Assembly (NCBI RefSeq): GCF_001194135.2
Contig: NC_069007.1
Coordinates: forward strand, 10,091,415-10,129,510
Reading direction: 5' to 3'
Source: Octopus bimaculoides
Taxonomy: Eukaryota
DNA: 38,096 bases
Made by a program: the position numbers and the translations under genes. The notes under the pieces are model-generated. The model saw only the letters and a program-made list of their open reading frames with translations. It did not search any database and was not told where the DNA came from. Shown here in pieces: positions 7,549 through 38,096 of the stretch; position 1 is the first letter of the stretch; each line of letters opens with the position of its first letter.

Positions 7549-8067
7549 NNNNNNNNNNNNNNNNNNNNNNNNNNNNNNNNNNNNNNNNNNNNNNNNNNNN
7601 NNNNNNNNNNNNNNNNNNNNNNNNNNNNNNNNNNNNNNNNNNNNNNNNNNNNNNNNNNNNNNNNNNNNNNNNNNNNNNNNNNNNNNNNNNNNNNNNNNNN
7701 NNNNNNNNNNNNNNNNNNNNNNNNNNNNNNNNNNNNNNNNNNNNNNNNNNNNNNNNNNNNNNNNNNNNNNNNNNNNNNNNNNNNNNNNNNNNNNNNNNNN
7801 NNNNNNNNNNNNNNNNNNNNNNNNNNNNNNNNNNNNNNNNNNNNNNNNNNNNNNNNNNNNNNNNNNNNNNNNNNNNNNNNNNNNNNNNNNNNNNNNNNNN
7901 NNNNNNNNNNNNNNNNNNNNNNNNNNNNNNNNNNNNNNNNNNNNNNNNNNNNNNNNNNNNNNNNNNNNNNNNNNNNNNNNNNNNNNNNNNNNNNNNNNNN
8001 NNNNNNNNNNNNNNNNNNNNNNNNNNNNNNNNNNNNNNNNNNNNNNNNNNNNNNNNNNNNNNNNNNN
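7549..8067. other. Assembly gap (N run) flanked by (TA)n
   Basis: N characters. Confidence 1.
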
Positions 8068-8826
8068 TATATATATATATATATATATGTATGTCTGTAT
8101 GAGTTAGAGGTTAAGCAACCATTCAAGGGATAATAAATATCCAATATACTACTGGATGTATACCTACATATTTATATCCAAGTGCTTACTATTGCAGGGC
8201 AGTATCACACTTGAATAGTAGGTATGTGTGGTGGTAAAACAGAAATTTACCCAGTATTTATAAGGCGAATAAGAAAATGAAGAGGATAAACAATCGACAA
8301 ACATCACCCTGTAAGCATTCGTTTATATCTGTTTATTAATTGATTACAATCATATGTATAAGTAATCAAAATAAACAAATGAAATAAGCAAATAAACAAG
8401 TAAATAAATAGATAAATAAAAATAAATAAATGAATAAGAATAAATGAGTGAACAAATGCTAAACTCTTACAGCTATTTCTACTATGGCGTTGCCCAGTCT
8501 GCCAAGTTTTCCACATCATGCCAGTAATATATAGGGATTGTACAAAGGTTGAACAAACATTGAACAGGGGTTGGACAATGATTGAGCTTCAAAGCTTCAT
8601 CAGAGAGACTATAATGTTAGGGATCAACATGTGAGGAAGTAAGGTAAAATAATAAAATAAAATAATAACATAATAGAAATAGTTAGGAATGCCCCAGCAT
8701 GGCCACATTAAAAGATAAAAGAACAGGTATCATTGTATTAACTATTTCAGTTTAAACAACTTTCCTTTGTTTCAATTAATTCTGAATATAACATAGGATT
8801 TATCAAAATAACTTTGTTGTTACTAA

Positions 8827-11002: not shown

Positions 11003-11480
11003 TCATCCTCATCATCATCATCATCATCATCGTTTAACATCCGCTTTCCATACTAGCATGGGTTGGACGATTTGACTGAGGACTGGTGAAACCAGATGGC
11101 TACACCAAGCTCCAATCTGATTTGGCAGAGTTTCTACAGCTGGATGCCCTTCCTAACGCCAACCACTCCGAGAGTGTAGTGGGTGCTTTTACGTGCCACC
11201 GGCACGAAGGCCAGTCAGGAGGTACTGGCAATGGCCACGCTCAAAATGGTGTATTTTATGTGCCACCTGCACAGGAGCCAGTCCAGCGGTACTGGCAACG
11301 AACTCGCTCGAATGTCTTTTCACGTGCCACTGGCACAAGTGCCAGGAAGGCGATGTTGGTAACGATCCCGCTCAAATGGTGCTATTTATGTGCCACCAGC
11401 ATGGAAGCCAGACAGCTGGTGCTCTGGCAACGATCACGCTCAGACGGTGCTCTTAGTGATCTACTGGTACAGGTGCCATC
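11003..11480 (-). mobile_element. Non-autonomous retroposon (Meta-SINE/RTE-tail-like) with (GAT)n tail and internal ~66-bp minisatellite
   Basis: Minus strand: repeat units, then GTTGGCGTTAGGAAGGGCATCCAGCTGTAGAAAC...GATGTTAAACGATGATGATG tail. GTGCCAC unit starts at 11193, 11260, 11324 and 11390, with a degenerate unit near 11456. Confidence 0.7.
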
Positions 11481-11859
11481 GTGAAAAAATAACACTATGT
11501 AACTTGATTTTTGTCCTTGGGCAGCAACCGCTATTTCCTATTTGCTTATCTCTAGAAAGTATGAAAAATGGCTAATGTTACCTTCAAACTTTGCTTTTGT
11601 CACATTTATTCAAACCCCTCAAAGAATTCCTCTCAACACATGACTACTATGCACCACCAATACTCCTGTTCATCATCAGAGATGTGCATATTGTCAGCCA
11701 CTCACAAGGCTTTGGTTAGTCCAAGGCTATAGTAGTATGAAGTTGCTGGCCTTGTGCCAAAATTTGAAATCTATATATATATATATATATGTGTGTGTGT
11801 GAATATATGTATGTGTATATCTATGTATGTATGTATGTATATTTGTGTGTTTTTGTGTA

Positions 11860-15671: not shown

Positions 15672-17015
15672 ATGGAAGGCGTTAATCGTTTGGATGCTTC
15701 TGATAACACGGTTTTTAACGATGTAGATTCTGTTACACAGACATACAATGGTGAGAAACCTTTATGCGATGAAACATTTACTGATCAAAGAAATATTACG
15801 GAATATCGCTGTGATTTTTGCAGTAAAACCTTTCTTTCAGAACATGAATTATTCACACACACAGAAATACACAAGGTAAAAGTTTTCCGCTGTGATGTCT
15901 GTGGAAAATCTTTTGTTTCTAACAGTAAGTTAACAAGACACAACTTGGTCCACACGGGAGAAAAATCTTACTGTTGTGAGATATGTGGGAAATGTTTTGC
16001 CTCTAACGGCGATTTAAACAGACACAGAAGAATACACATGGGGGCAAAATCGTTCCAGTGTGACGTATGTGGGAAATCTTTTGTCTCGAATAGCGACTTA
16101 ACAAGTCATAATAGAATACATTCGGGAGGAAAGGCGTTTCACTGCGAAATATGTGGGAAATCTTTCAATTATAATTCGAAACTTGTTATCCACAGACGAA
16201 TACATACTGGAGAAAAACCGTATCACTGTGAAATATGTGGGAAATCGTTTGTCGGCAATAATTATTTGACAAGTCACAGAAGGATACATAACGAAGAAAA
16301 ACTGTTCCACTGTCAGATATGTGAAAGATCGTTCACGAAAAACTCGAACCTTGTTACCCACATTCGTAGCCATACTGGAGAAAAGCCTTTCCGCTGTGAA
16401 ATATGCGAAAAATCTTTTGTTTCTAACACCAAATTAATGACCCACAAAAGGGCGCATACTGGTGAGAAGTCCTTCCACTGTGTAATATGCGGGAAATCTT
16501 TTGTTAATAACAGTAATTTAACAAGGCATAAAATAATCCACACTGGAGAGAAGCCTTTCCACTGTGAAATATGTGGCAAATCTTTCAATTATAATTCGAA
16601 CTTTGTTGTCCACAAAAGAATACATACTGGAGAAAAACCCTATCACTGCAAAGTATGTGGAAAAGCATTTATCGATAATAGTTATTTGATCAGTCACAAA
16701 AGAATACACAACAGAGAAAAACTGTTTCATTGCGATATATGTGAAAAGTCTTTTTCTAATAATTCGAATCTTGTCATCCACAAACGAAGTCACACTGGAG
16801 AAAAACCCTATCACTGTGAGGTATGTGGGAAGTCTTACATGAATAATTCACACCTTGTCACTCACATCCGTAGCCACACTGGAGAAAAACCATACAGCTG
16901 CGAGGTCTGTGAGAAATCCTTTATCACCAACAGTCACTTAACAAGACACAAACAAATCCATACTGAACGGAAGCCTGTTAATTGCGAAACACCAGAAATC
17001 GTCTTGCAAATGTAA
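15672..17015 (+). CDS. C2H2 zinc-finger protein ZF1, 447 aa, 14 tandem fingers, single coding exon
   Basis: Uninterrupted ORF with C-x2-C-x12-H-x3-H repeats every 28 aa from finger 2 onward and TGEKP-type linkers. No recognisable N-terminal effector domain. Confidence 0.95.
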   Translation: MEGVNRLDASDNTVFNDVDSVTQTYNGEKPLCDETFTDQRNITEYRCDFCSKTFLSEHELFTHTEIHKVKVFRCDVCGKSFVSNSKLTRHNLVHTGEKSYCCEICGKCFASNGDLNRHRRIHMGAKSFQCDVCGKSFVSNSDLTSHNRIHSGGKAFHCEICGKSFNYNSKLVIHRRIHTGEKPYHCEICGKSFVGNNYLTSHRRIHNEEKLFHCQICERSFTKNSNLVTHIRSHTGEKPFRCEICEKSFVSNTKLMTHKRAHTGEKSFHCVICGKSFVNNSNLTRHKIIHTGEKPFHCEICGKSFNYNSNFVVHKRIHTGEKPYHCKVCGKAFIDNSYLISHKRIHNREKLFHCDICEKSFSNNSNLVIHKRSHTGEKPYHCEVCGKSYMNNSHLVTHIRSHTGEKPYSCEVCEKSFITNSHLTRHKQIHTERKPVNCETPEIVLQM

Positions 17016-17311
17016 ATTTCTAGTCCAACACTGTGTACACACACATAAGAGAATATGTAAAGGGAATCATTCTCATTTTGTAATCTACAAATGTATTTGC
17101 ATTTGAGGGAGAGACTTTTTTTGTAAAAATATTTGTAAATTATAAACTTGTGATTAGCAAAATGTTATTGTGAATGAAATATTTGGAGAAAAATTTAGTG
17201 TGAATTAGTCTTTTCTTGTCATCCACAAGTTTGAATACAGGCTTAAGATAAAAGAAAAAAACTGTTAGTGTGAAATGTGGTAGATATGACTTTCTTTTCT
17301 TTTTTTTTTTT

Positions 17312-17682
17312 TTACTTGTTTCAGTCTTTTGACTGTGGCCATGCTGGAGCACCGCCTTTAGTCGAGCAAATCGACCCCAGGACTTATTCTTTAGAAGCCT
17401 AGTACTTATTCTATCGGTCTCTTTTGTCGAACCGCTAAGTTACGGGGACATAAACACACCAGCATCAGTTGTCAAGCGATGTTGGGGGGGGGGGACAAAC
17501 ACAAACACACATATATACATATATACGACGGGCTTCTTTCAGTTTCCGTCTACCAAATCCACTCACATGGCTTTGGTCGGCCCGAGGCTATAGTAGAAGA
17601 CACTTGCCCAAGGTGCCACACAGTGGGACTGAACCCTGGACCATGTGGTTGGTAAGCAAGCTACTTACCACACAGCCACACC
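17312..17682 (-). mobile_element. SINE family A, full length, low divergence
   Basis: TTTACTTGTTTCAGTC...GGAGCACCGCCTTTAGTCGAGCAAATCGACCCCAGG...CTACTTACCACACAGCCAC. Confidence 0.92.
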
Positions 17683-17715
17683 TTGCTGAAAGATCCTGTA
17701 ACCATTCTTTGCCAT

Positions 17716-18770
17716 AATGGCAAGCTGGCACAATTATTACTGCATCAAACATAATACTTAGTGGTATTTCTTCTGGTTTTACATTCTAGGTTCAAATCCC
17801 ACCAAGGTCTACTTTGCCTTTCATCCTTTCAGAGTCAATAAAACTAGTATCAATCAAGCACTGGGGTTGAGGTAATTGACAACCCCCTACCCTAAAATTT
17901 CAAGTCTTGTGGTTACGGTAAAAAGAAAGGGGAAAAAATGTATTCCTCATTAAAGTTTTTTTATCGTGACACAATCTTGTCAATAATTGTCTCACATTTT
18001 GGCACAAGGCCAGCAATTTTAGGGGTCGGGTAAGTGGATTACATCAATCCCAGTACTTGGTTGGTACTATATTGTATCGACCCCATCCCAAAATGATGAA
18101 AAGCACATTTGAACTCAGAATATAAAATGTCTGAAGAAATACCACAAGGCATTTTGTCCAGCATGCTAACAATTCTTTTCTATTCAAGGCACAAGTCATG
18201 AAATTTTGGGGGTGGGGACTAGTTGATTACATTGACCCCAGTGCACAACTGGTACTTAATTTCTTGACCTCAAAAGGATGAAGGGCTAAGTCAACCTCGG
18301 CGGCAGCATGTTAACAATTCTACCAACTTGCTACTATGACAATCTCATTCATATTTGTCTACAGTAAGCTCAAGGATTGAAACTTTGTGGGAGATGGCTG
18401 ATCGATTTCATTGACCCCAGTTTTTGACTGATATTTTATTCTATAAACTCGCAAAACATGAAAACCAAAGTTGCCCTTGGCAGGTTTTGAACTCAGAATG
18501 TAAAGAGCTGGAAGAAATACCTCTAAGAATTTTGTCCGACACTATAACGATTCTGCCAGTTCACAATTCTAAATGGTGTAAGGCCTGCAATCTTAGGGAG
18601 GGGTTTAGTCAATTATATCAACCCCAGTACTTCACTGGTACCTATTTTATCGATCCCGAAAGGAAAAAAGGCAAAGTAGACCTTGGTGGGATTTGAACAC
18701 AGAACAAAGAGTCAGACGAAGTGTTGCTAAGCATTTCGTCTGACACTCTAATGACTCTGCCAGCTCACTG
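17716..18770. mobile_element. Cluster of five SINE family B copies (one plus at about 17716-17920, four minus at about 17995-18770)
   Basis: Repeated CAAGGCC...AATTTT..GG...ATT(A/G)CATTGACCCCAG...GGTACT...GGATGAA...TTTGAACTCAGAA blocks. Confidence 0.8.
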
Positions 18771-20900: not shown

Positions 20901-21840
20901 TTAGACTAGCTGAAATGTAGTTTGGTTTTGTTACAGGGAAGAGTGCTACAGATGCCATGTTCCTAGTGAGACAGCTGCAGAAGTATCAAGCCAAAAGTTA
21001 AAAAAATTGCACTTAGCATTCATTGACCTCAAGAAAGCCTTCAACAGAATCTTTTGCTCTGTTATCTGGTGGTCTCTAAGGAGGTTAATAGACAAATGAC
21101 TTGTTAGAGCTGTACAAGCCATGAACAGGGCAATGTCAGTAGGGTGAGGGTCAGCTATGAGTACAGTGATGAATTCAGTGTTCAAGGAGTTCATCAGGGC
21201 TTGGTTCTCAATCCTTTCTCATTCAGGTCAGTAGTTCCCAAAGTGGGCAGTATTGCACCCCTGGGGGAGGTGGAAATTTCCATGAGGGCATTGAAGAAAA
21301 GTGGGTAATAATGGGGGTAGCAATTTGTGTAAAAAGTGGGGCAATTCATGTAAAAATTAAAATAATGAGTTCATTAAGTTAAGTTTTATTTGTGAAATAC
21401 AGTTGTTTTGAATTTGCTTCAGAAAGAGGTCCTTGTTTGTGACAGTTAATTGGGCTGGAGGCACTAAGAATATAGCCTGGGTGTCAAGGGGTCAGCAGCC
21501 CAAAAAACTTTGGGAACCACTGCTCTAGGTCATTGCAAAGGAATTTAAGACTAGTTATTCCAGGATAGATGATCATGTTCTCATAGCAGAATCTGTGACA
21601 GAAAAGAAATTCTAGGTGTGGATGCAGGACCTGAATTCAAAGGACTTAAAGTCAACATAGGAAAGACCGAAGACCTAGAAAACAGGAAAAAATATGTAGG
21701 ACTCTACCTCCATCAGATAAATGGCCCTTCTCAACATGCAGGAAAGGTGTAGGCAGAAATTCTATACTGTGTACCCAGTGCAAACTATGGACACAAGAGG
21801 GACAATGGAATCATATGAAAGTTAATGGAGAGTGTAGTGT
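20901..21840 (+). mobile_element. Decayed RTE-clade LINE reverse transcriptase, interrupted by a MITE
   Basis: Translates FGFVTGKSATDAMFLVRQLQ..., LAFIDLKKAF, GVHQGLVL.P, then after the MITE a broken YADD region (IDDHVLIAES), GLKVNIGKT and a Cys-rich KWPFSTCRKGVGRNSILCTQCKLWTHKR. Multiple stops and frameshifts. Confidence 0.85.
21229..21522. mobile_element. hAT (Charlie-like) MITE, 294 bp, nested in the RTE relic
   Basis: TIRs CAGTAGTTCCCAAAGT / ACTTTGGGAACCACTG. Flanking 8-mers ATTCAGGT and CTCTAGGT form a degenerate 8-bp TSD. Confidence 0.8.
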
Positions 21841-22109
21841 TTTAATAAGAAATGAAAAGCAGTACTGGTGTTGTAAACACTGTGAACCACACATGCTCAA
21901 TGTGTTTTGTTTGTTTGCCAGTTGGCTGTGGTATAGTATTTGGGGGACAACTCCCTCATAGCGCTGGTTGTTAAAACACCTGAAAATCTCTCTCTCTCTC
22001 GTCTGCTACATCCCATTCATCACTACAAAATTCTGTCGGAGGTGAGTCATCTCACCTGTCTATGACTTCCAGGTGTTTTAACACACACCATGATGAGAGA
22101 ATCATCTCC

Positions 22110-22640
22110 CCAAGTGCTTTCTCTCTCTATCACTTCCTCTCTCTCTCTCTTCCCCTCTCTCTCTTCTCTCCTCTCTCTTCCCCTCTTTGTCTCCCCATCT
22201 CTCTCTCTTCTCTTTGTTTCCCCATCTCTTTCTCTTTTTCTCCTCTTTCTCATTCTCCCTCTTCCCATCTTTGTCTCCCCATCTCTCTCTATCTCTTCCT
22301 CTCTCTCTATTTCTCTCTCCTCTCTCTTCCCCTCTTTGTCTCCCCATCTCTCTCCTGCTACACCCCATTCTTATCTATTATCATTCCTCAATGCCTTCTC
22401 ATTTCTGCCATCATGCCCCTCTCACTGTTGCTCCCTTTTATCCCTTTTATATCCCAACATCTCTCTCTCTACCACCCCTACACCTTGCCCATCATCCTGC
22501 TACTCCCTGACCTACTCTCCTCTCTGAACCATTCCCTATATCTCCCACCCTGCCCCCTCAACTGCACCTCCACCTTTGTTCATCACTCACAATATTTACC
22601 TCCACCTCCATCTGTTACTCCCCCTCACACCCTATGAAAG
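22110..22640. repeat. Polypyrimidine/polypurine low-complexity tract with (CT)n and repeated CTCTTCCCCTCTTTGTCTCCCCATCT units
   Basis: Direct reading. Units occur near 22172, 22261 and 22322; the tract continues as C-rich sequence to about 22640. Confidence 0.9.
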
Positions 22641-24662: not shown

Positions 24663-25290
24663 TCTATTTATAGAAAATTTCTTTAAAACATATTCATTGT
24701 TTTCTGAAAGTTATATAGAAACAAATGAGCTTTGTAGAAAATGAAGGAGTGTATGTTTTCGATTAAAAAAGAACTTTGTTTATCTTTGTTTTGAAAAATA
24801 AAAGATGTATAAAAAGACCGCATGATTTGTGGGATGACCCAAGGAAATACAAATTTCAATGACATTTTCTGTATCTAAATATGTTAATACAACAGAGACA
24901 ATCATCAGCTTTGCATGGTGAATTCTACATTTACATGATCTTCTCTATCCGTATTCTTGTTGTCTAATACTCTGAATTTCTCAGAATTCCTCTAAATGAT
25001 ATTTGGATCTACTCATCATTCATAAAGGATTACCTTGGATGTATAGTCTACTTGCATTTATTGGTGTCTGATTGTTGGATATTGTTAACCAGATTCATTT
25101 AAAACTGAGTACTTTATTGATATCAGCCTCAAAAGGGACATCTATATACACACACATCTTTAAATCAGGGAAATGGGAATATATCTTAGCCACATTCATT
25201 TGTTCAGGTGCAAGTTTACATCTCTACAGTGTATCAATATTGAAATATAGTAAAATTTCCACAATTCAGTCTCATCTTCTTAATTATCCT

Positions 25291-25744
25291 CTATGTCTTA
25301 TTCTGTTTCTCTATTATTTCAGAACATCGGATGACATTGGACTTCAGATGTATAGTCACTTTCAACATTTCAATGTTAAGGGGAAATATTCTACAGAACA
25401 GATATAACCCTCTTTATATAAATCTATGGTGAATTATTGTGAAATATTTCTTCTGAACAAGGATTACTAGAGAAGTTTCTCTGCTTCACTGCGTGGAATG
25501 TGTTCAAGATGATTCTGAATTTTAATTAAGCTGGGACAAATTTACACATAGGAATTCACAGCATCTTTAGATAGCAACAGATTTTACAATTGAGAGAAAT
25601 ACAACAAAGGAAAATTTTGTTATGACTAAAATATACAAATAAGACAAATATCCATCTTATGTGGTGAACGGAGAAAAATTACATGAAACTAAAATTTGTA
25701 AGAAAATAAAAGACTGAATTTTTTTTTTTTTTTTTGCTGAAGTA
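25291..25744 (+). promoter_or_regulatory. Splice acceptor and uORF-containing leader of ZF2 with decayed N-terminal domain
   Basis: TATTATTTCAG|AACATCGGATG acceptor (25322/25323); uORF 25331-25432; relic ATG at 25426. Homologous to 32611-33014 on the minus strand. Confidence 0.7.
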
Positions 25745-27124
25745 ATGTCAAAATTGGTAGGAAAATCTTCATATAATTGCAATGTCTGTAAAAAATCATT
25801 CTCCCAAAAACATGGTCTTACTGAACACAAGCGAATTCATACAGGAGAAAAACCATTTTATTGTGGTATCTGTGGTAAATCATTTTCAAAAAACGATCAC
25901 CTTACTAAACATATACGCATCCATACAGGGGACAAACCATATCACTGTGATATCTGTGGTAGATCATTTTCTTGTACAAGTAGCTTAACTAGTCACAAAC
26001 GTACTCATACAGGAGACAAACCATATCACTGTGATATCTGTGGAAAATCATTCTCTGAAGGAAGTGCTGTCACTATACATAAACGCATTCATACAGGAGA
26101 GAAACCATATCGCTGTGACGTCTGTGGTAAATCCTTTTCTCAAGGAAACCATTTAACTACACACAAGTATATTCATACTGGGAAGAAACCATATCACTGT
26201 GATATCTGTGGTAAATCATTTTCTCATAAAGTTGTTCTACAAACACATAAGTTTATTCATACAGGAGAAAAACCATATCAGTGCAGTATCTGTGGCAAAT
26301 CCTTCTCTCTTATGAATCACTTGACTAATCACAAACAGATTCATACTGAGGGGAACCCTTGTGCCTGTGACATCTGTGGTAAATCATTCTCTCAAATAAA
26401 TCACTTAACTAAACACAAATACATTCACACAGGAGACAAACCATATCACTGTGATATCTGTAATAGATCATTTTCTTTAAATCGTTACTTAACTAGGCAC
26501 AAGTTTACTCATACTGGAGAAAAGCCATACATCTGTAATATCTGTGGTAAGTCATTCTCTCATACAAGCAGCTTAACTAAACACAAAATTATTCATACAG
26601 GAGAAAAGCCATATCCTTGTGATATTTGTGGTGTGTCATTCTCTCATATGACTAGCTTAACTAACCACAAACGGATTCATACAGGAGAGAAGCCATTTCA
26701 CTGTGATATCTGTGGTAAATCATTTGCTCAAGGAGGTAGCTTAGCTCAACACAAATGCATTCATACAGGAGAAAAACCATATTACTGTGATATCTGTGGC
26801 AAGTCGTTCTTTCGACAACATTACTTAACTGTACACAAGTATATTCATACAGGAGAGAAACCATACCACTGTGATATCTGTGGTAAATCATTCTCTTATA
26901 AAGGTAACTTAACTCAACACAATCGTATTCATACAGGAGAGAAACCATATCGCTGTGATATCTGTGGTAAATCGTTCTCTCATACAAGTACCTTAACTCA
27001 ACATCAACACATTCATACAGGAGAGAAACAACATTGCTGTGATATTTGTGGCAAGTCATTCTCTGTTGTGGGTAGCTTAACTAAACATAAGCGAATTCAC
27101 AGAAGAAAAACCATTCCATTGTGA
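25745..27124 (+). CDS. C2H2 zinc-finger protein ZF2, 459 aa, 16 tandem fingers
   Basis: Uninterrupted ORF of 28-aa C2H2 units with TGEKP linkers. It ends via a frameshift in the last linker (RRKTIPL*). AATAAA at 27513. Confidence 0.93.
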
Positions 27125-27434
27125 TATCTGTAAGAAATCATTCTCTCACACAGACAGCTTAACTATACACAAATATATTCATACTAGAGTAAAATCATGT
27201 CCTTGTGATATCTATGAGAAATCATTCTATGTAGAAAGTAAAATAACTAGACACAAATATATTCATACAGGAGAGAAACCATATCACTAAAATATCCATA
27301 GTAAATCATTTTCTCAGACAGGTCACTTAATCTTCCACAAAACCACCACTAGCTCTAATATCTGTGATGAATCTTTCTCTCAAAAAAGTCACTTAATTAC
27401 ATATACATGTACCTGCACAGGACAAAAGATGTAA
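27111..27434 (+). pseudogene. Out-of-frame fossil zinc fingers in the ZF2 3' UTR
   Basis: Shifted frame reads [24 protein letters not shown] (intact), [51 protein letters not shown], and a fourth more decayed unit. Confidence 0.9.
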
Positions 27435-29213
27435 CTGTGTGGTAATAATCTTCTTTATGTAACCACAACTAATATGTAAAGTGTTGAAATTATTTGCTAT
27501 AGTGATATTTTCAATAAAAGTATTCTTTCAAAATATTCATGTGTTCTGAATATTTATATACAAGTAGGCTGGGGATTATTATTATTGATTTTAATGGTTA
27601 AGCTGGCAGAATTGTTAGCATGCCAAGCAAAATGCTTTGTGGCATTTCGTCTTGTTTTACAATCTGAGTTCAAATTCTGCTGAGGCTGACTTTGCCTTTT
27701 ACAAATCCATTCTGGGATCATCACCTCTCCAACAAGGTTTCATCATTCTTTTTCAGCCTTGTCCAATGGCTGGTCCTCCCAGTGACATTCGACTGGAAGT
27801 GATTGGCCACCCTGTAGATATAGTAGAATAGACTTGTCCTAGGTCCCACACATTGAGATTCAACCTGAGTAAGTTCCTTGCCATACAACCACACCTATTA
27901 TATTGTGGAACAAAATAAAGTTTTCTTTTTTGTCTTTGGTTAGTAAGTGTTTTTCCTATATGCTTCTCTCTATAAATCAAAGGAAATGACTACTGCTCCC
28001 TTCAAATACTGCTTTTATCACCTGGACATCAATGTTTTGAAACTGACCTATTGAGTTGCTGCAGCAGAATATCGTTATAACAAATATTTTGCACAATACC
28101 ACAGATTTGCTTGACCATAACTACTTGAGCATGTCCCTTAGTGGCCAACAATCTGTGCATCTTTGATTGTGGGCAGGAGAAATAGTAGGACAGCATCATA
28201 GTAATGTGTTGAGAGAGATTATTTGGGTTTTGAATAAATATCATAAGAAAAGCAAAGTTTGAAGGAGATATTAGCCATTTTTCATGCTTTCTAGGGTTCA
28301 GCAAATAGGAAAAAAACAGCTGCTACCCAAGGACAAAAATTGTGTTAGTGTTATTTATACCCTCTCTTGAACATCATCGGATACCTGAGATAGAACACTA
28401 CCAAAGTCAAAAACGCCTGGCCAGAGGTCGAGCCCAACCAAAAGCCTCAAATGCCACAATGTTGAAAAATATAATATTCCAACTGTTGTAGTGGAAATGG
28501 TCCACCCCTCCCATGGGACAAGTGGTATGACCCAACAACTATAAAGTGAGATGATGTCAACTAGTACAGAGAGTTGTGTATCAGCCGTTGTACGAGTTCT
28601 CAGCTGGAGGTAAGTGTCAGTTACGTGTTATAGTCGAGTTCAAGCCACAGTCAAGGTAGACAGTTCAAAGTCTGTGTCTTGCAGAGCTATCAGCGATAGC
28701 ACAATAGGTGAAGTGGCATATTACCATTCTGGTATAGAAGAGATAAACTATCCAATACCAAGAAAATATTGTGGCTACTAGAGTAGATACAAGTGGCCAC
28801 ATATTATATATCTGTGGAAAACACATCATAACATCAACAAATTAGGTTATTTTAGTATCTTATTCGATTCAGCTATGAATGTAGTAATACCAGTAATACT
28901 CACCGCCATCACAGCCACAGAGTTATTGATGTGTGATGGAGAAAAATTGTTATTAACAGTGACATCCCATAAGAAGCATCTGTCTCTAGTCCCTGGGCAA
29001 ATAGTGAGTCTGTCAGGTATCAAACAGTAAAACTAATTCTACAAATCTCTAGAATTTTTTTCGGTACCAATATGAGAAGTGACACTGGTTTGAAACGGTT
29101 GTGTAAACTACATAAATTCTTCCCTGAAATTCTTGTTCAGGGTTTTGGTATCTGCAGTGATGATATGGGTACAGTAACAAAAAAGTTTTTGAAGACAAAA
29201 AACTACAACACTT

Positions 29214-29345
29214 TTATGTGTCACCCGCATGAAGGCCAGTCAGGCGGTACTGGCAACGGCCACGCTCATCTCGCTCGAGAAACCTCATGTGTCACCCGCA
29301 CAAGAGCCAGTCCAGGGGCACCAGCAACGATCCCGCTCGAAAATC
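29214..29345. repeat. Two orphan copies of the ~66-bp unit seen at 11193-11480
   Basis: ATGTGTCACCCGCATGAAGGCCAGTCAGGCGGTACTGGCAACGGCCACGCTC and ATGTGTCACCCGCACAAGAGCCAGTCCAGGGGCACCAGCAACGATCCCGCTCG. Confidence 0.85.
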
Positions 29346-29614
29346 CCATAATGAGAATCCTAAAGAAAATAATCAGTAAATTAGTTACTAAGGAATATAT
29401 TCCATTTATATAAGATTGTTATTCTTAGAGGAATAAATATTGCTGTTTAAAAAATAAGATAATTACAATATGGTTAAGATAACCTAAGATCTAAAAAAAA
29501 AATAATCAAAATTAATTTTAATTAAAAGGTAATAGAAAGATAATTAAGTAATTAAAATAATATATCATCAAATAATTTCATTGTAGAGGTCTAGGACTTA
29601 GTAATAATGGTTTT

Positions 29615-29775
29615 AGATTTTGGCACAGGGTCAGCAGTTTTTGAGGGGAGAGAAGGAACTGATTACATTGACCCCAGTACTTGACCCTGAATGGATGAAA
29701 GGCAAAGTTGACCTCGGCAGAATTTGAACTGAGAATATGAATGAGACAGGTGGAATGCTGCTAAGGATTTTCTCT
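29615..29775 (-). mobile_element. SINE family B, degenerate
   Basis: GATTACATTGACCCCAGTAC...GGATGAAAGGCAAAGTTGACCTCGGCAGAATTTGAACTGAG. Confidence 0.75.
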
Positions 29776-30082
29776 GGTTCTTCAAGTGTTGCAGATTATC
29801 AAATCATTAGCATTACAGAGCTCCAGCAGCATTGTTCCTTCCCCATTCCAGAGTGCTGCCTGATTTGTCCATTGAGGTAATCAGCCATAAAGTAATTGTC
29901 ATGTATCATCAAGGAAATCTACAAAAGGGCCTTGATAAATTGGTGCCCCTGTTCATCTGCCAGTCCAGACTGCAGGGTACAAGCAGAGAGATATTGTCGT
30001 CAAATTAATCAAGATCAGTCTAAGCTTGATTATTCTGTCCCACATCAACTATCTCAATCACTTTATATACCAATTTTTCTTA

Positions 30083-30417
30083 CTTCTTTATTGCCCACAA
30101 GGGGCTAAACAAGGACAGATAGAGGGATTAAGTCGATTACATCGACCCCAGTGCATAACTGGTACTTAATTTATCGACCCTGAAAGGATGAAAGGCAAAG
30201 TCGACCTCGAAGGAATTTGAACTCAGTACGTAAAGACAGACGAAATACCGCTAAGCATTTCACCCGGCGTGCTAACGTTTCTTATTTCTTTATTGCCCAC
30301 AAGGGGCTAAACATAGAGGGGACAAACAAGGACAAAGGGATTAAGCCGATTACATCAACCCCAGTGCGCAACTGGTACTTAATTTATCGACCCTGAAAGG
30401 ATGAAAGGCAAAGTCGA
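30083..30417 (-). mobile_element. Two head-to-tail young SINE family B copies (second truncated by gap)
   Basis: TTCTTTATTGCCCACAAGGGGCTAAAC...ACTGGTACTTAATTTATCGACCCTGAAAGGATGAAAGGCAAAGTCGA occurs twice (30083, 30287), nearly identical. Confidence 0.9.
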
Positions 30418-30689
30418 NNNNNNNNNNNNNNNNNNNNNNNNNNNNNNNNNNNNNNNNNNNNNNNNNNNNNNNNNNNNNNNNNNNNNNNNNNNNNNNNNNN
30501 NNNNNNNNNNNNNNNNNNNNNNNNNNNNNNNNNNNNNNNNNNNNNNNNNNNNNNNNNNNNNNNNNNNNNNNNNNNNNNNNNNNNNNNNNNNNNNNNNNNN
30601 NNNNNNNNNNNNNNNNNNNNNNNNNNNNNNNNNNNNNNNNNNNNNNNNNNNNNNNNNNNNNNNNNNNNNNNNNNNNNNNNNNNNNNNNN
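30418..30689. other. Assembly gap (N run)
   Basis: N characters. Confidence 1.
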
Positions 30690-31019
30690 ACGATGAAATA
30701 TTTTCTTTCGTGTTTTGTACAATTGTTTGAAATGTTAAAAAGTGATGTTCTCATTTTTCAATGGCAATACATTTCTCAGCTTTTTATCTGCAATAAAATT
30801 TTCCTCCTGAAAATATATTACACAGAATCATGTTTGTTCATTATTCTGACATCCATTTTTCTATACTTTGCATGGATCAGATGGAGTTTTGATGAAGATT
30901 CTCTACAGCAGAATGCCTTTCTTGTGGTCATTCCTCACTTGTTCCCAAGTAATATTTCCTCATGGCCAGACATTTGGAAATAAATAACACTGCTTGTGTG
31001 AGGGTAATATCAAGACAAG

Positions 31020-31205
31020 GGTACACACAAACACACACATGCACATATATATGATGAGATTCTTCCAGTTTCCATCTACCAAATCCACTCACAAGGCTTT
31101 GGTCAGGCTGAGACCAGAAAACAAAAAATCACTTGCCCAAAGTACTGTACAGTGGGACTGAACTTGAGACCACATGGTTAGCAAGCAAGCTTCACAACCA
31201 CACAG
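31020..31205 (-). mobile_element. SINE family A, 5' half
   Basis: CCAGTTTCCATCTACCAAATCCACTCACAAGGCTTTGGTC...CCACATGGTTAGCAAGCAAGCTTCACAACCACACAG. Confidence 0.8.
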
Positions 31206-31399
31206 ACTATACATTAGATGAACATATATAAATAATCTGCAAGAATGATTTATTAAAAATATCAGTTATAATTTATTGCATTAAAGTGGACATAGATATG
31301 GTTATACAGTGTCTGAAGATAGCTATATCTTCTTTGTCTAACAGATACACCGATGGTTATATAACATTAGATTTACGGAAAGATTTTTGACATTATGTG

Positions 31400-31950
31400 G
31401 CTCACGTTCTGTATGAATACATACATGTGTAGTTAAGTGGCTGTTTTGAGAGAATACTTTACCATAGTGTGTGTTGGCATTCCGTCGCTTACGACATCGA
31501 GGGTTCCAGTTGATCCGATCAACGGAACAACCTGCTCATGAAATTAACGTGCAAGTGGCTGAGCACTCCACAGACACGAGTACCCATAACTTAGTTCTCG
31601 GAGATATTCAGCGTGACACATTGTGACAAGGCTGACCCTTTGAAATACAGGTACAACAGGAAGAAAGAGTGAGAGAGATTTGTGGTGAAAGAGTACAGCA
31701 GGGTTCGCCACCATCCCCTGCCGGAGCCTAATGGAGCTTTAGGTGTTTTCACTCAATAAACACTCACAACGCCCGGTCTGGGATTCGAAACTGTGATCCT
31801 ATGACCGCGAGTCCACTGCCCTAACCACTGGGCCATTACGCCTCCATTTTACCATAGATATAGGGTGATATTCTCTTCCCTGAGTGTACATGTGGATTTT
31901 TCAAGGTACTTCCCTTCAGAATATGATTCACTGAATACACTTGTGTCCAT
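31400..31950 (-). pseudogene. Fossil zinc fingers in the ZF3 3' UTR, split by a SINE
   Basis: After the frameshift stop: LNGHKCI, SEG.STLKNPHVHSG, then the SINE, then YGKVFSQNSHLTTHVCIHTE. AATAAA on the minus strand at 31272-31277. Confidence 0.8.
31468..31847 (-). mobile_element. Full-length tRNA-head SINE family C with 10-bp TSD
   Basis: Minus-strand head GGAGGCGTAATGGCCCAGTGGTTAGGGCAGTGGACTCGCGGTCATAGGATCACAGTTTCGAATCCC; tail GTAAGCGACGGAATGCCAACACAC. TTTACCATAG at both 31458-67 and 31848-57. Confidence 0.92.
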
Positions 31951-32610
31951 TTAAGAAACAATAGACAATGATTTACTGCAGGTGTTGCAGTGATATGGCT
32001 TCTCTCCTGTATGGGTGAGTTTGTGTCTTTTTAAGCTACTTGTCTGAGAGAATGATTTACCACAGATATCACATTTAAAAGGTCTGATTCCTGAATGGCT
32101 ACGCTTATGTTTAGTTAAGGTACTTCCTTCAGAGAACGATTTACCACAGACATCACAGTGATATGGCTTCTCTCCTGTATGAATGTTCTTATGTGCTGTT
32201 AAGTGACTCTTTTGAAAAAATGATTTAGTGCAGACATCACAGTGAAATAGCTTCTCTCCCGTATGAAAGTACTTGTGTTCGGTTAAGTGACATTTTTGAT
32301 AGAATGTTTTGCCACAAATATCACAAAGATATGGTTTTTCTCCGGTATGTGTACGTTTGTGAGTTGTCAAGTGACTTCCTTCAGAGAATGATCTGCCACA
32401 GACATCACAGTGATATGGTTTCTCACCTGTATGTACGCGTATGTGTGTAACTAAGTAGTTATTTTGAGAGAAAGTTTTACCGCAAATATCACAGCGATGT
32501 GGCTTTGCTACTTTGGGAGTTCGTTTGGGAGCTGAGACGTAATCTCTTTGAGAGGATGGCTTTTCACAGATATCACTACTGTCTGTTGATTTCCCTGTCT
32601 CTTCTGCCAT
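31951..32610 (-). CDS. C2H2 zinc-finger protein ZF3, 219 aa, 6 intact fingers plus degenerate N-terminal and truncated C-terminal fingers
   Basis: ORF with C2H2 repeats and TGEKP linkers. The N-terminal DSSDICEKPSSQRDYVSAPKRTP is a finger that lost its Zn ligands. The last finger stops at CNTCSKSLSIVS*. Confidence 0.88.
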   Translation of the reverse strand: MAEETGKSTDSSDICEKPSSQRDYVSAPKRTPKVAKPHRCDICGKTFSQNNYLVTHIRVHTGEKPYHCDVCGRSFSEGSHLTTHKRTHTGEKPYLCDICGKTFYQKCHLTEHKYFHTGEKLFHCDVCTKSFFQKSHLTAHKNIHTGEKPYHCDVCGKSFSEGSTLTKHKRSHSGIRPFKCDICGKSFSQTSSLKRHKLTHTGEKPYHCNTCSKSLSIVS

Positions 32611-33014
32611 CTCTTGAGGAAAATAAACTCAATTCTTTCACTTTCTCACATAAATCATTTTTAAATAATTTATTAATTTCTCCTCTATCACAACTAAATA
32701 TATATATATAGTTGTATTTACAGTATTATCATATATATTTTAACACCTATATTTCCATCAGCAGTGATCGTTGTTGATATCTAAAGATGCTGCAAATCCA
32801 TTCAATTTTAATTATATCCCAAAAATCATGCACACATTCCAAACAGCCAAATAGTGACTTTTGAGAAATTTTGTTTACAAAAGAAATTTCAATGCAATTC
32901 CTCATCTATGCATCAGTTCTGTATATTATCTTCCAGGATACTGAAGTAAAAATATTCTGTCCTGCCAATGTCATCTGATGTTCTGAAATAAAAGAGAAAG
33001 AGAATAAGATATAG
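32611..33014 (-). promoter_or_regulatory. Splice acceptor and uORF-containing leader of ZF3
   Basis: TTTTATTTCAG|AACATCAGATG acceptor (32983/32982); uORF1 32974-32906; uORF2 32905-32747 (52 aa). Homologous to the ZF2 leader. Confidence 0.7.
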
Positions 33015-33064
33015 GAGAGAGTTAGCTGGAATGTTATTATATTGTTCTTTCCTCCTTTACATGT

Positions 33065-33392
33065 TTCGGTCATTGAATTGTTGCCATGCTGAGAACTACA
33101 TTGAAGGGCTTAGTCAAACGGATCAACCCCAATTTTTGTGTTTTTGTGTGGTACTTATTCTATCATTCCTTTGTTGAACTGTTAAGTCATGGAGGTATAA
33201 ACAAACCAATACCAGTTGTCAAGCAGTAATGGGGTGGGACAACAGACACAGAAAGAAGGCTTCTTTCAGTTTCTAACAACCAAATCCACTCCCAAGACTT
33301 TGGCTGGCCCAATGCTATAGTAAAAAACGTGCAGAGGGACTAAACTGAGGACCATAAGGTTGGGAAGTAAACTTCTTAACTACACAGCCACA
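33065..33392 (-). mobile_element. SINE family A, diverged
   Basis: TTTCGGTCATTGAATTGTTGCCATGCTG...GGCTTCTTTCAGTTTC...CTTCTTAACTACACAGCCAC. Confidence 0.75.
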
Positions 33393-33615
33393 TCTAAACC
33401 TTCATCTGGAAAACTGAAGTATTTCATACATCCTTACATTTTGAAGATGTGTGTATACATGTGTATGTATGTGTGTAAACACATATGTTGTCAATATACT
33501 AGTTAACCCATAGCTGTGAGTTTTGCAGATGATACTACTCTCTGGGACAAGTAGTGGCCAAGAGGTGTTTTCAAACTGCTCAAAACCTTAAAACATTCAT
33601 GACCAAAGGGGGTCT

Positions 33616-35241: not shown

Positions 35242-35552
35242 GGAGGCGCAATGGCCCAGTGGTTAGGGCAGCGGACTCGCGGTCATAGGATCGCGGTTTC
35301 GATTCCCAGACCGGCGTTGTGAGTGTTTATTGAGCGAAAACACCTAAAAGCTCCACGAGGCTCCGGCAGGGGATGGTGACGAACCCAGCTGTACTCTTTC
35401 ACCACAACTTTCTCTCACTCTTTCTTCCTGTTTCTGTTGTACCTGTAATTCAAAGGGTCAGCCTTGTCACACTGTGTCACGCTGGATATCCCCGAGAACT
35501 ACGTTAAGGGTACACGTGTCTGTGGAGTGCCCAGCCACTTGCACGTTAATTT
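35242..35552 (+). mobile_element. tRNA-head SINE family C, truncated by gap
   Basis: GGAGGCGCAATGGCCCAGTGGTTAGGGCAGCGGACTCGCGGTCATAGGATCGCGGTTTCGATTCCC (A and B boxes). The body matches the reverse complement of 31468-31847. Confidence 0.92.
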
Positions 35553-36002
35553 NNNNNNNNNNNNNNNNNNNNNNNNNNNNNNNNNNNNNNNNNNNNNNNN
35601 NNNNNNNNNNNNNNNNNNNNNNNNNNNNNNNNNNNNNNNNNNNNNNNNNNNNNNNNNNNNNNNNNNNNNNNNNNNNNNNNNNNNNNNNNNNNNNNNNNNN
35701 NNNNNNNNNNNNNNNNNNNNNNNNNNNNNNNNNNNNNNNNNNNNNNNNNNNNNNNNNNNNNNNNNNNNNNNNNNNNNNNNNNNNNNNNNNNNNNNNNNNN
35801 NNNNNNNNNNNNNNNNNNNNNNNNNNNNNNNNNNNNNNNNNNNNNNNNNNNNNNNNNNNNNNNNNNNNNNNNNNNNNNNNNNNNNNNNNNNNNNNNNNNN
35901 NNNNNNNNNNNNNNNNNNNNNNNNNNNNNNNNNNNNNNNNNNNNNNNNNNNNNNNNNNNNNNNNNNNNNNNNNNNNNNNNNNNNNNNNNNNNNNNNNNNN
36001 NN
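35553..36002. other. Assembly gap (N run)
   Basis: N characters. Confidence 1.
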
Positions 36003-36034
<32 letters not shown>

Positions 36035-36248: not shown

Positions 36249-38096
36249 TTATTTAAATGTTAATTCAATCCTTCTCTCTTTCTTGTTGAAATTGTTGATA
36301 ACATCATTGTAGAAGGTATCGTTCTTAATGCTTTTTAAAACGGCTTTTTCTATGCCAATTAGAGCTAAACTGCTCGACCTTTCTTGTCCCTGCGAATTTC
36401 TCGTATAACTATGAATTCTGTTTAGGTATGAAGAAGAGCGCTCCACTGTAGCACTTATTGTTGGTAGTGTTAATATTAATTCACAAAGCTTCGTTAACTG
36501 GGGCAAAGCTTCATCTAATCCACTATTACGCAGGATGTAAAGTAAATCTTGAATGGATTTTCCTTTTAGTTCAGCATCTTTGTACAGGGCAGTAAGTTCG
36601 CTTCTTAACTTTTGGCTGTCGAAATGGTCTTCATAGGTATGTTTAAGACAAGTTAGAGATGTTTCCTGGACGTTGTTACTTTGTCTCATTGGATCGAGAA
36701 GCGCTAAAAAATGTAATTCATTTAAATTTTGAAATCTTATCTCAATGTGCTCGCAAATTAAATCTATAATTTTGTAGAACAGCTGTCTGTATCTTTCTTC
36801 TTCTGTTTCAAAAGCAGTTTTTCTTTTCTTTATTTGAGGATAAATGCCATCAACGTTAGCCCAAAATTTAGAAAATTCTTGCTTTTTTTCTTTCAAAACT
36901 TTCACAATTTCATTTACTGTATGAATACAGTAGAATACGTCAAATGTATTTTCCTGGAGGATGTCAAATGCTGTATTTGTGTAAATAAAAATATCTCCAA
37001 ACACATTTAACAAAAAATTGAATTCACAATTTTGTAAATTAGAATACAACGACTGAGCATAGGTATAGCTTTCCGTGTCCCATCTACTTGAATTATCAAT
37101 GATGTTTAGGAATAAATCAGCAAGTTGCTCATGATATTCACGAACTGTTTCTACCAAAGAATGATTCAAGTTCCAGCGAGTTGGCGTCACTTTTGGAAAA
37201 CGCTTTTTAATTTCAGTATCTAGATGCACGCGTTTGGTCGACTTACAAAAAAATAACGAAAAAGACTTTATCTGTGAAAAAAACTTATCGCATTCTTGAA
37301 TATTTGCAGCCGCTTGAGACAGAACTAGATTTAATCTATGGGCCATACAATGAACAAAAAAAGCATGAGGATACTTTTCTTTAACTTTCTTTTGCAAACC
37401 ATTTAATTCACTTGGCATCACACTTGCACCATCATAAGTATGAGCCACAAACTTATGGCCAATTTTTAACTCTTCTATTTTATCGAACACAATTTTTGAC
37501 AAACCACTTGCCGTACGATCAAAACTTACATTTAAAAATCCTAAAAATCTTTCTGCAATATTACCGTCACTTAAAACATATCTTATAACAAATGAAAGCT
37601 GTGCTCCAGTTCTAATTTCAGTTGCTTCATCTAAAATGATAGCCACAAATGTTGAATCGTTAATTTCCGATTTAATCTTTTCTAAAAGAACTTCAGCCAC
37701 GCTATTTATTAAATCATTTTGAAATCTGTTTGAAGTGCCAGAAAAAACGCCTTCCTCTTGCAAATTTGATAATATAGGATCGTATTTCTTACAGAGGTGG
37801 AGTATTTCTACGTAATTGCCCTCATTATCAAAATCAGCTGATTCATCATGACCTCTGAATGCTAGTTGTTGTTCACTTAAAAAACAAACTACATCAATTA
37901 ATCGTCTTAAGATCTCCCTATTTTTCTTTACTTTTTCATTATGAGTTTCAATATTCTTTTGATGTTGGCTGTTTAATAAAAAATCAATACGCGTTTTTCC
38001 GAATCTTGTTAAATCAATCACTGATGTTAAATGAGAAGTAGATAGCTCGTGTCTTTTAATGGCTTTATGCAAATTATTTAAATCAGAAAATCCATA
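36249..38096 (-). CDS. hAT-superfamily transposase / ZMYM1-like protein (DUF4371-type + hAT dimerisation domain), at least 615 aa, 5' end outside window
   Basis: The frame is open to the window edge: the ORF-track start at 38072 is TTG, preceded in frame by YGFSDLNN. Motifs HE.S..H (TTF-type Zn finger end), LAFRGHDE, IILDEAT (D), YDGASVM (D), CMAHRLNL (CxxH), PTRW and TVERSSS (E). Confidence 0.9.
   Translation of the reverse strand, partial: YGFSDLNNLHKAIKRHELSTSHLTSVIDLTRFGKTRIDFLLNSQHQKNIETHNEKVKKNREILRRLIDVVCFLSEQQLAFRGHDESADFDNEGNYVEILHLCKKYDPILSNLQEEGVFSGTSNRFQNDLINSVAEVLLEKIKSEINDSTFVAIILDEATEIRTGAQLSFVIRYVLSDGNIAERFLGFLNVSFDRTASGLSKIVFDKIEELKIGHKFVAHTYDGASVMPSELNGLQKKVKEKYPHAFFVHCMAHRLNLVLSQAAANIQECDKFFSQIKSFSLFFCKSTKRVHLDTEIKKRFPKVTPTRWNLNHSLVETVREYHEQLADLFLNIIDNSSRWDTESYTYAQSLYSNLQNCEFNFLLNVFGDIFIYTNTAFDILQENTFDVFYCIHTVNEIVKVLKEKKQEFSKFWANVDGIYPQIKKRKTAFETEEERYRQLFYKIIDLICEHIEIRFQNLNELHFLALLDPMRQSNNVQETSLTCLKHTYEDHFDSQKLRSELTALYKDAELKGKSIQDLLYILRNSGLDEALPQLTKLCELILTLPTISATVERSSSYLNRIHSYTRNSQGQERSSSLALIGIEKAVLKSIKNDTFYNDVINNFNKKERRIELTFK

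What the first reader, a model, noticed from the sequence alone, without database searches (positions are those of the whole stretch)
25291..25432. ZF2 and ZF3 share a 46/50-identical splice acceptor and the same uORF-stop/ATG coupling
25291-25340 (+) and 33014-32965 (-) are 46/50 identical, although the genes differ in finger number and the sequence just downstream diverges. In both, an ATG sits exactly 8 nt into the exon (AACATCRG-ATG-ACA-TTG). The uORFs differ in length and sequence (33 versus 22 aa), yet both end at a second homologous ATG: ATGgTGA overlap in ZF2 and TAG-ATG abutment in ZF3. That geometry resembles termination-reinitiation control and may be a conserved translational switch across the octopus ZNF expansion.
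Basis: partly seen in the sequence, partly recalled or inferred. Interest (0 to 1): 0.7.

Follow-up and report, generated by a model that had tools for sequence, protein, structure and literature searches.

The report
Shared splice acceptor of octopus zinc-finger genes
The 50-base match is the conserved intron end and first bases of a leader exon shared by a subfamily of duplicated octopus zinc-finger genes, while the proposed small-reading-frame "translational switch" is a coincidence of these two copies and is ordinary.

Summary
The window is Octopus bimaculoides chromosome CM046627.1. The sequence observation holds. The two 50-mers are 46/50 identical. Each has an ATG at exon base +9. The uORFs are 33 and 22 codons, and they end as ATGgTGA and TAG-ATG.

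The block is a real, constrained 3' splice site: branch point, pyrimidine tract, CAG and an 11-base exon start. I found it in 17 paralogous leaders from three Octopus species, and TTTCAG is kept in 16 of them. Two annotated gene models splice exactly at this AG.

The translational-switch reading fails on four counts:
- **Second ATG:** it is not the gene's start. It opens ORFs of 14 and 52 codons. The zinc-finger ORFs begin about 300 nt further on, after seven or eight more ATGs.
- **Conservation:** the +9 ATG is in 12 of 17 copies and is no better kept than its flanks. The first uORF is 4 to 33 codons long. The second ATG is seen in 4 of 14 copies inspected.
- **Coupling:** stop/ATG coupling at that site occurs only in the two window copies. 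ZF3's nearest paralog lacks it.
- **Chance:** shuffled leaders give such coupling about 16% of the time, and the upstream-ATG count is at the chance level.

The upstream break in homology is a SINE insertion in ZF3's intron. Interest is low.

The parts
25200..25213 (+). Donor-like motif TTGTTCAG|GTGCAA. It marks the putative end of a non-coding exon 1 of ZF2 (exon end 25207).
   Evidence: The motif TTGTTCAG|GTAAAT lies 96-133 nt upstream of the acceptor in 9 paralogous copies, 8 of them with GT. Its use as a donor is inferred, not shown.
25208..25322 (+). Putative short intron (115 nt) of ZF2. It is homologous to the same interval in paralogs on other chromosomes and in other species.
   Evidence: The alignment of upstream regions shows homology back to about -130 in ZF2, L003, L004, L005 and L006 copies.
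25291..25322 (+). ZF2 3' splice site: branch-point candidate CTTAT at about -26, a pyrimidine tract (82% Y) and CAG.
   Evidence: TTTCAG is kept in 16 of 17 copies.
25323..25744 (+). ZF2 leader (5' part of the exon that carries the ZF ORF). It has 9 upstream ATGs against 8.6-9.4 expected by chance.
25331..25432 (+). ZF2 uORF1: 33 codons plus TGA, starting at the +9 ATG, which sits in a weak context (C at -3, A at +4).
25426..25470 (+). ZF2 'second ATG' ORF: only 14 codons plus a stop. It is not the gene's start.
25405..25407 (+). TAA stop in the third frame of the leader exon. It is the end of a 390-aa gene model annotated in the GenBank record.
   Evidence: the called gene ends at L001:9663, which is window 25407.
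25745..27124 (+). ZF2 zinc-finger ORF, 459 aa, 16 fingers.
32983..33014 (-). ZF3 3' splice site: branch candidate, pyrimidine tract (91% Y) and CAG.
32611..32982 (-). ZF3 leader, with 10 upstream ATGs against 8.8-9.6 expected by chance.
32906..32974 (-). ZF3 uORF1: 22 codons plus TAG.
32747..32905 (-). ZF3 'second ATG' ORF: 52 codons plus a stop. It ends 136 nt before the ZF start codon.
31951..32610 (-). ZF3 zinc-finger ORF, 219 aa, 6 fingers.
33053..33328 (-). SINE copy inserted in ZF3's intron just upstream of the splice-site block. The same insertion is in sister copy L007. It explains why ZF2/ZF3 homology stops at about -38.
   Evidence: blastn with the SINE from L004:9563-9974 gives HSPs at 33328-33262 and 33254-33053.

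Best explanation
The 50-nt block is the 3' splice site plus the first 14-19 nt of the leader-plus-coding exon. The splice site comprises a branch-point region, a polypyrimidine tract and CAG. A subfamily of tandemly duplicated Octopus C2H2 zinc-finger genes shares this exon.

Purifying selection on splicing signals keeps the block at about 90% identity, including an 11-nt exon start, ATCAGATGACA. The rest of the leader has drifted to about 58% and the finger-coding region to about 71%.

The +9 ATG is carried along as part of that 11-mer. The uORFs behind it are by-products of an AT-rich leader with chance-level ATG and stop density. The stop/ATG juxtaposition in ZF2 and ZF3 arose independently: different stop codons, different frames, and a 4-nt deletion in ZF3. 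It is coincidental.

Shown here: the conservation pattern, the non-conservation of the uORF geometry, and the gene-model junctions. Inferred: actual use of the acceptor in ZF2/ZF3 mRNAs, and the short upstream intron (25208-25322).
For: - 17 leader copies were recovered in O. bimaculoides, O. vulgaris and O. sinensis. TTTCAG is present in 16 of 17, the tract is 73-91% pyrimidine, and a YTNAY candidate lies at -26 to -30 in 15 of 17.
- A conserved donor-like motif lies 96-133 nt upstream in 9 copies.
- Models P0108 and P0132 end in exons that start exactly at this AG and join canonical GT donors. A 390-aa model in this locus stops at 25407 inside the exon.
- ZF2 versus ZF3 identity is 88-92% in the block, 58% in the leader and 71% in the CDS.
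- The second ATGs open 14- and 52-codon ORFs. The ZF ORFs start at +423 and +373.
- The +9 ATG is in 12 of 17 copies. In the 14-copy alignment the ATG positions are conserved in 11-13 of 14 against 13-14 of 14 for the flanks, and by my count from that alignment 6 of 12 substitutions in the 11-mer hit the ATG.
- uORF1 lengths are 33, 22, 15, 4, 4, 4, 12, 12, 31, 31, 32 and 32 codons. Coupling at the second-ATG site occurs only in ZF2 and ZF3.
- ZF3's sister L007 has TTG at that site and a 15-codon uORF1.
- In shuffled leaders the first uORF's stop lies within -6 to +1 of an ATG in 16-17% of cases. uATG counts of 9 and 10 match the chance expectation.
- Rfam gives no RNA family in the region.
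Against: - No RNA-seq, long-read cDNA or CAGE data could be consulted, so splicing at 25322/25323 and 32983/32982 rests on conservation and on annotation models. Those models require GT-AG by construction.
- For the window's own 390-aa model I verified only the stop coordinate, not the exon start.
- The +9 ATG is still present in 12 of 17 copies. A uORF of about 32 codons ending at a homologous TGA is shared by ZF2 and the distant L010b/c copies. Some repressive role of uORF1 is therefore not excluded.
- The sample is 17 copies out of a family of many hundreds of genes.
Confidence: 0.8

Rival explanations
1. uORF1 terminates on or next to a second ATG, and termination-reinitiation at that ATG controls translation. 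This is a switch conserved across the octopus ZNF expansion.
For: The geometry is really present in both window copies. The joint chance probability is modest: about 0.027 for any uORF length, or about 0.005 if uORF1 must be at least 10 codons.
Against: - The restart ATG opens 14- and 52-codon dead-end ORFs, not the ZF ORF. Seven or eight further ATGs follow before the ZF start.
- The second ATG is present in 4 of the 14 copies inspected. Coupling at that site is seen in only 2 of 17 copies and is absent from ZF3's 91%-identical sister.
- The stops are non-homologous and in different frames.
- By eye, neither uORF1 contains a TGGGA-type 18S-complementary motif (sequences).
Confidence: 0.04
2. 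A weaker uORF model. The +9 AUG and its uORF, ancestrally about 32 codons ending at the conserved TGA near +107, act as a generic translational damper for this ZNF subfamily, without any stop/start coupling. The uORF is purged in copies selected for higher expression.
For: - The +9 ATG is retained in 12 of 17 copies.
- ZF2 (33 codons) and L010b/c (32 codons) end at the homologous TGA.
- Copies that lost the +9 ATG have few uATGs. L005c has 0 against 6.2 expected, L005b has 3 against 8.0, and L006b has 5 against 8.2.
Against: - The ATG is no better conserved than its flanks.
- uORF1 is cut to 4 codons in three copies, and its peptide is not conserved.
- The start context is weak (C at -3).
- ATG density in ZF2 and ZF3 is at the chance level.
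Confidence: 0.12
3. The block is a core promoter rather than a splice acceptor: a TATA-like CTATATCTTA at about -32 and an initiator-like TCAG at the 'exon start'.
For: The spacing of TATAT to the A of CAG is about 32 nt in several copies (alignment).
Against: - The TATA-like element is not conserved. It reads TATGTC in ZF2 and TACATT in the L005 copies.
- What is conserved is a pyrimidine tract plus CAG.
- Two gene models splice into this exact AG.
Confidence: 0.04
4. The 46/50 identity reflects recent duplication or a local gene-conversion tract between ZF2 and ZF3, not constraint.
For: The two genes are only 7.6 kb apart, in inverted orientation.
Against: - Identity is not uniform: 88-92% in the block against 58% in the leader and 71% in the CDS.
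- The same block is equally conserved in copies on other chromosomes and in two other species.
Confidence: 0.03

Closest known systems
Conserved exon-intron architecture of tandem C2H2/KRAB zinc-finger gene clusters: non-coding or short 5' exons spliced onto one large exon that encodes the whole finger array (my own knowledge of vertebrate KZNF genes)
   Same: The whole finger array sits in one exon, preceded by a leader. Paralogs share a conserved acceptor. The genes lie in tandem or inverted clusters interspersed with transposons (a hAT-derived ORF and SINEs in this window).
   Different: No KRAB or other N-terminal domain exon was detected. The upstream exon appears non-coding, and the intron is very short (about 100-130 nt).
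uORF-mediated delayed reinitiation (yeast GCN4, mammalian ATF4)
   Same: The 5' leader contains several uORFs upstream of a regulatory-protein ORF.
   Different: There is no conserved number, position or length of uORFs among paralogs. No last uORF overlaps the main ORF. ATG density is at chance.
Viral termination-reinitiation with overlapping stop/start (calicivirus VP1/VP2 TURBS, influenza B M1/BM2 UAAUG)
   Same: A stop codon overlaps or abuts an AUG in the two window copies.
   Different: The restart AUG does not open a functional ORF. No 18S-complementary UGGGA motif lies upstream. The arrangement is not conserved in relatives.
Transcription-induced chimeras / conjoined genes in tandem gene clusters
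   Same: Annotated models join a GT donor inside an upstream finger array to this acceptor of the next ZNF gene (P0108, P0132, and the 390-aa model in the window).
   Different: Only annotation models were seen here. Transcript support could not be examined.

Membership tests
Canonical U2-type 3' splice site | AG dinucleotide, preferably CAG, at the intron end | tested here: met
   TTTCAG is present in 16 of 17 copies. One apparent pseudogene copy (L005d) has TTTCAA.
Canonical U2-type 3' splice site | Polypyrimidine tract in the 20 or so nt before the AG, and a YNYURAY-like branch site 18-40 nt upstream | tested here: met
   The tract is 73-91% pyrimidine over -25 to -4. A YTNAY candidate lies at -26 to -30 in 15 of 17 copies.
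Canonical U2-type 3' splice site | Observed use in transcripts | tested here: inconclusive
   Exons of models P0108 and P0132 begin exactly at the AG and join GT donors. The window's 390-aa model stops inside the exon. No RNA reads were available.
Termination-reinitiation (TURBS-type stop/start coupling) | Stop codon overlapping or within a few nt of the restart AUG | tested here: met
   ATGGTGA at 25426-25432, and TAG-ATG at 32908-32903 on the minus strand.
Termination-reinitiation (TURBS-type stop/start coupling) | The restart AUG opens the functional downstream ORF | tested here: not met
   It opens ORFs of 14 and 52 codons. The ZF ORFs start 319 and 295 nt further downstream.
Termination-reinitiation (TURBS-type stop/start coupling) | Upstream 18S rRNA-complementary motif (UGGGA) within about 40-90 nt of the stop | tested here: not met
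   By inspection, neither uORF1 sequence contains TGGGA (sequences).
Termination-reinitiation (TURBS-type stop/start coupling) | Arrangement conserved among relatives | tested here: not met
   Coupling at the second-ATG site is seen in 2 of 17 copies and is absent in ZF3's sister L007.
GCN4/ATF4-type delayed reinitiation leader | Conserved short 5' uORF plus an inhibitory last uORF close to or overlapping the main ORF | tested here: not met
   uORF1 length ranges from 4 to 33 codons. The last uORFs end 36 nt (ZF2) and 28-36 nt (ZF3) before the ZF ATG without overlapping it.
Functionally conserved uORF | Start codon more conserved than flanking bases, and/or conserved peptide or length | tested here: not met
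   ATG positions are conserved in 11-13 of 14 copies against 13-14 of 14 for the flanks. By my count from that alignment, 6 of 12 substitutions in the 11-mer fall in the ATG. The peptides are unrelated except between recent duplicates.

The most novel reading that the evidence does not exclude
The strongly conserved acceptor may act as a cluster-wide capture site. Read-through transcripts from an upstream ZNF gene would be spliced from cryptic GT donors inside its finger array into the next gene's leader exon. That would give truncated finger proteins with short leader-encoded tails, carried on bicistronic-looking mRNAs. It would be a regulated way of varying finger number in the octopus ZNF expansion. 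In that case the open frames in the first 85-110 nt of the leader would matter as C-terminal tails rather than as uORFs.
Probability: 0.15. Interest if true: 0.45.

Novelty: new member of a known kind. Interest (0 to 1): 0.15.

Why it matters
As it stands, the finding mainly gives a correct gene structure for one subfamily of the octopus C2H2 expansion: a short non-coding exon, an intron of about 100-130 nt, then a leader-plus-finger exon. It also gives a sequence tag, the acceptor block, that could be used to census and classify these genes.

It removes a tempting but unsupported claim of a conserved translational switch. If the chimeric splicing into this acceptor proved real and regulated, it would bear on how large ZNF clusters diversify their products.

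Tried and rejected
1. A protein search with ZF3 and with ZF1 was swamped by vertebrate and insect ZNFs. The ZF1 search failed to return the locus's 390-aa annotated product, so I could not verify that model's exon start at 25323.
2. An exact look-up of the ZF1 ORF found no record.
3. I considered a second acceptor just before the ZF start (TTTTCCTCAAG|AGATG). I rejected it because that stretch is homologous to coding sequence in paralogs: FPEEM in P0062/L003b.
4. I considered a donor ending ZF3's 52-codon ORF (ATATAG|GTGTTA). I rejected it because it is not conserved in ZF2 or L003b, and the stop would be retained anyway.
5. I considered the GTAACA donor-like site in the L004/L005 leaders. It is not conserved in ZF2, ZF3 or L003b.
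6. An Rfam scan of 25000-33500 gave only one sub-threshold, irrelevant hit.
7. A literature search for octopus + zinc finger + uORF returned no papers. The 2015 octopus genome paper is not held in the library.
8. No transcript contigs carrying ZF2 or ZF3 were on record. Only the chromosome assembly was found.

Full report
**Origin and layout.** The ZF2 and ZF3 ORFs are encoded verbatim on Octopus bimaculoides assembly GCA_001194135.2, chromosome CM046627.1, at about 10.09-10.13 Mb.
- The window holds three C2H2 zinc-finger ORFs. ZF1 is 15672-17015 (+), 447 aa. ZF2 is 25745-27124 (+), 459 aa, 16 fingers. ZF3 is 32610-31951 (-), 219 aa, 6 fingers.
- It also holds a hAT/ZBED5-like ORF at 38072-36249 (-).

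**Observation.** All the sequence facts in the finding are correct.
- 25291-25340 (+) and 33014-32965 (-) are 46/50 identical.
- The 27-nt core occurs twice in the window against zero expected from shuffles.
- After TTTCAG the exon would start at 25323 (ZF2) and 32982 (ZF3), and both have ATG at +9.
- uORF1 is 33 codons in ZF2, ending with the TGA of ATGGTGA at 25426-25432.
- uORF1 is 22 codons in ZF3, ending with a TAG that abuts the ATG at 32905.

**What the second ATG is.** It is not the gene's start.
- In ZF2 it opens a 14-codon ORF, and in ZF3 a 52-codon ORF.
- The zinc-finger ORFs begin at +423 and +373.
- The leaders carry 9 and 10 upstream ATGs. That equals the 8.6-9.6 expected from base composition.
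- The coupling therefore links two dead-end uORFs, not a uORF and the protein.

**Extent of homology.**
- ZF2 and ZF3 are homologous, with indels, from about -38 through the whole leader into the coding region. Identity is 88-92% in the block, 58% in the remaining leader and 71% in the first 300 nt of CDS. Identity is therefore not uniform, and the block is the best-kept part.
- The abrupt loss of similarity upstream of -38 has a simple cause. ZF3 and its sister copy L007 carry a SINE insertion in the intron. This shows as blastn HSPs at window 33328-33053 with the SINE taken from L004:9563-9974 and in the alignments.
- ZF2's own upstream sequence aligns with other paralogs back to about -130.

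**Paralogs.** Protein searches gave Octopus ZNF proteins. Look-ups of their loci gave about 270 kb from O. bimaculoides, O. vulgaris and O. sinensis. blastn, fuzzy matching and an nhmmer profile found 17 copies of the leader exon, almost all directly upstream of finger arrays.

| Feature | Result |
|---|---|
| TTTCAG acceptor | 16 of 17 copies |
| Pyrimidine content, -25 to -4 | 73-91% |
| YTNAY branch candidate at -26 to -30 | 15 of 17 copies |
| Exon start ATCAGATGACA | each position conserved in 11-14 of the first 14 copies |
| Donor-like TTGTTCAG\|GTAAAT, 96-133 nt upstream | 9 copies, 8 with GT |

- The donor-like motif implies a short intron, which in ZF2 would be 25208-25322.
- Two annotated models use this exact AG with canonical GT donors. 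P0108 is an O. bimaculoides model whose last exon starts at L003:21261. P0132 is an O. sinensis model whose last exon starts at L010:18254.
- In the window itself, a 390-aa model of the GenBank record ends at 25407, a TAA inside this exon.
- I conclude the block is a genuine, constrained 3' splice site. RNA reads were not available, so its use in ZF2 and ZF3 mRNAs is inferred.

**The uORF features are not conserved.**
- The +9 ATG is present in 12 of 17 copies.
- In the 14-copy alignment its three positions are conserved in 13, 12 and 11 of 14, against 13-14 of 14 for the flanks. By my count from that alignment, 6 of the 12 substitutions in the 11-mer fall in the ATG. The ATG is kept as part of the 11-mer, not for itself.
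- uORF1 lengths are 33, 22, 15, 4, 4, 4, 12, 12, 31, 31, 32 and 32 codons.
- In the 14 copies I aligned at the second-ATG site, only ZF2, ZF3, L003b and L004 have ATG. The others have GTG, TTG, TTA, GTC or a deletion. The L010b copy, read from its sequence, also lacks it.
- In L003b and L004 uORF1 stops after 4 codons, about 80-95 nt before that ATG.
- ZF3's closest relative, L007, is 91% identical in the CDS. It has TTG at the site and a 15-codon uORF1. ZF3's ATG arose by a 4-nt deletion.
- The two window stops are different codons in different frames.
- In shuffled leaders with a fixed +9 ATG, the first uORF's stop lies within -6 to +1 of some ATG in 16-17% of cases. Among the 12 real copies with a uORF1 the figure is 3 of 12, and one of those is a trivial ATG-TAG in a 4-codon uORF.

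**Residual possibilities.**
- A uORF of about 32 codons from the +9 ATG to a homologous TGA is shared by ZF2 and the distant L010b/c copies.
- Copies that lost the +9 ATG have unusually few upstream ATGs. L005c has 0 against 6.2 expected.
- A generic damping role of upstream ATGs in some members is therefore not excluded. It is not a stop/start switch.
- Separately, three annotation models splice from GT donors inside an upstream finger array into this acceptor. If transcripts confirm this, the acceptor would capture read-through transcription in the cluster.

**Comparison with known systems.**
- The architecture matches the usual layout of tandem zinc-finger genes: short 5' exon(s) spliced to one array exon.
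- It fails the defining tests for termination-reinitiation. The restart codon does not open the functional ORF, there is no UGGGA motif, and the arrangement is not conserved.
- It also fails the tests for GCN4/ATF4-type leaders: no conserved uORF set and no uORF overlapping the main ORF.
- Rfam finds nothing in the region. No paper in the held library links octopus zinc-finger genes with uORFs. Background on the C2H2 expansion is in PMC9068888.

**Verdict.** The 'splice acceptor' reading is supported, and the 'conserved translational switch' reading is not. This is an ordinary conserved splice site of a paralogous gene family, and interest is low.

Noticed in passing
window 15672-17015 and 25323-25407; L003:12101-13582 and 21261-21333; L010:10001-11777 and 18254-18360: Annotated gene models join a GT donor inside an upstream zinc-finger array to the leader-exon acceptor of the next ZNF gene. 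This gives truncated finger proteins with short leader-encoded tails (P0108, 368 aa; P0132, 123 aa; a 390-aa model ending at window 25407). The pairing of a ZF1-type gene (N-terminus MEGVNRLD/MENVNHLD) followed 8 kb later by a leader-type gene recurs on two chromosomes.
   Followed up: partly
window 25683-25744 (+) and 32656-32611 (-): The stretch just upstream of the ZF2 and ZF3 start codons is homologous to the N-terminal coding sequence of paralogs (MEKSEKLKELIFPEE... in P0062/P0060). In ZF2 and ZF3 it is interrupted by in-frame stops (MKLKFVRK* and MIYVRK*KN*). These two genes would therefore have to start at an internal Met about 15-20 codons downstream of the ancestral start. ZF3's first finger is also degenerate.
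   Followed up: partly
L005:35275-35557: One O. sinensis paralog, with an intact 298-aa ORF, has a 283-nt leader with no ATG at all against 6.2 expected. L005b has 3 against 8.0 and L006b has 5 against 8.2. All three have lost the +9 ATG by point changes confined to the ATG. This hints that upstream ATGs are purged in some members.
   Followed up: partly
window 36249-38072 (-): A 607-codon ORF, annotated as a 575-aa gene with DUF4371, FAM200/ZBED5 RNase-like and hAT dimerisation hits. It is a domesticated or recently active hAT-type transposase lying between the inverted ZF3 and L007 copies.
   Followed up: no
window 17301-17683, 3225-3707, 1913-2295, 24-301, 33053-33328 and others; L004:9563-9974: There are many copies of a SINE of about 400 nt. 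The 412-nt query from L004 gave 181 HSPs across the fetched loci. One copy sits inside the leader of the O. vulgaris paralog, and others sit inside the short intron of several paralogs (ZF3/L007, L009).
   Followed up: partly
window 11086-11484 (+) and 29072-29413 (+): Two ORFs share a peptide stretch (CHRHEGQSGGTGNGHAQ and CHPHEGQSGGTGNGHAH), so they probably belong to another dispersed repeat.
   Followed up: no
window ~6120-6370, ~7550-8080, ~30410-30690, ~35550-36010: Runs of N (assembly gaps) flanked by TA/CA microsatellites. There is also a CT-rich low-complexity tract at 22062-22637 with strong negative GC skew.
   Followed up: no
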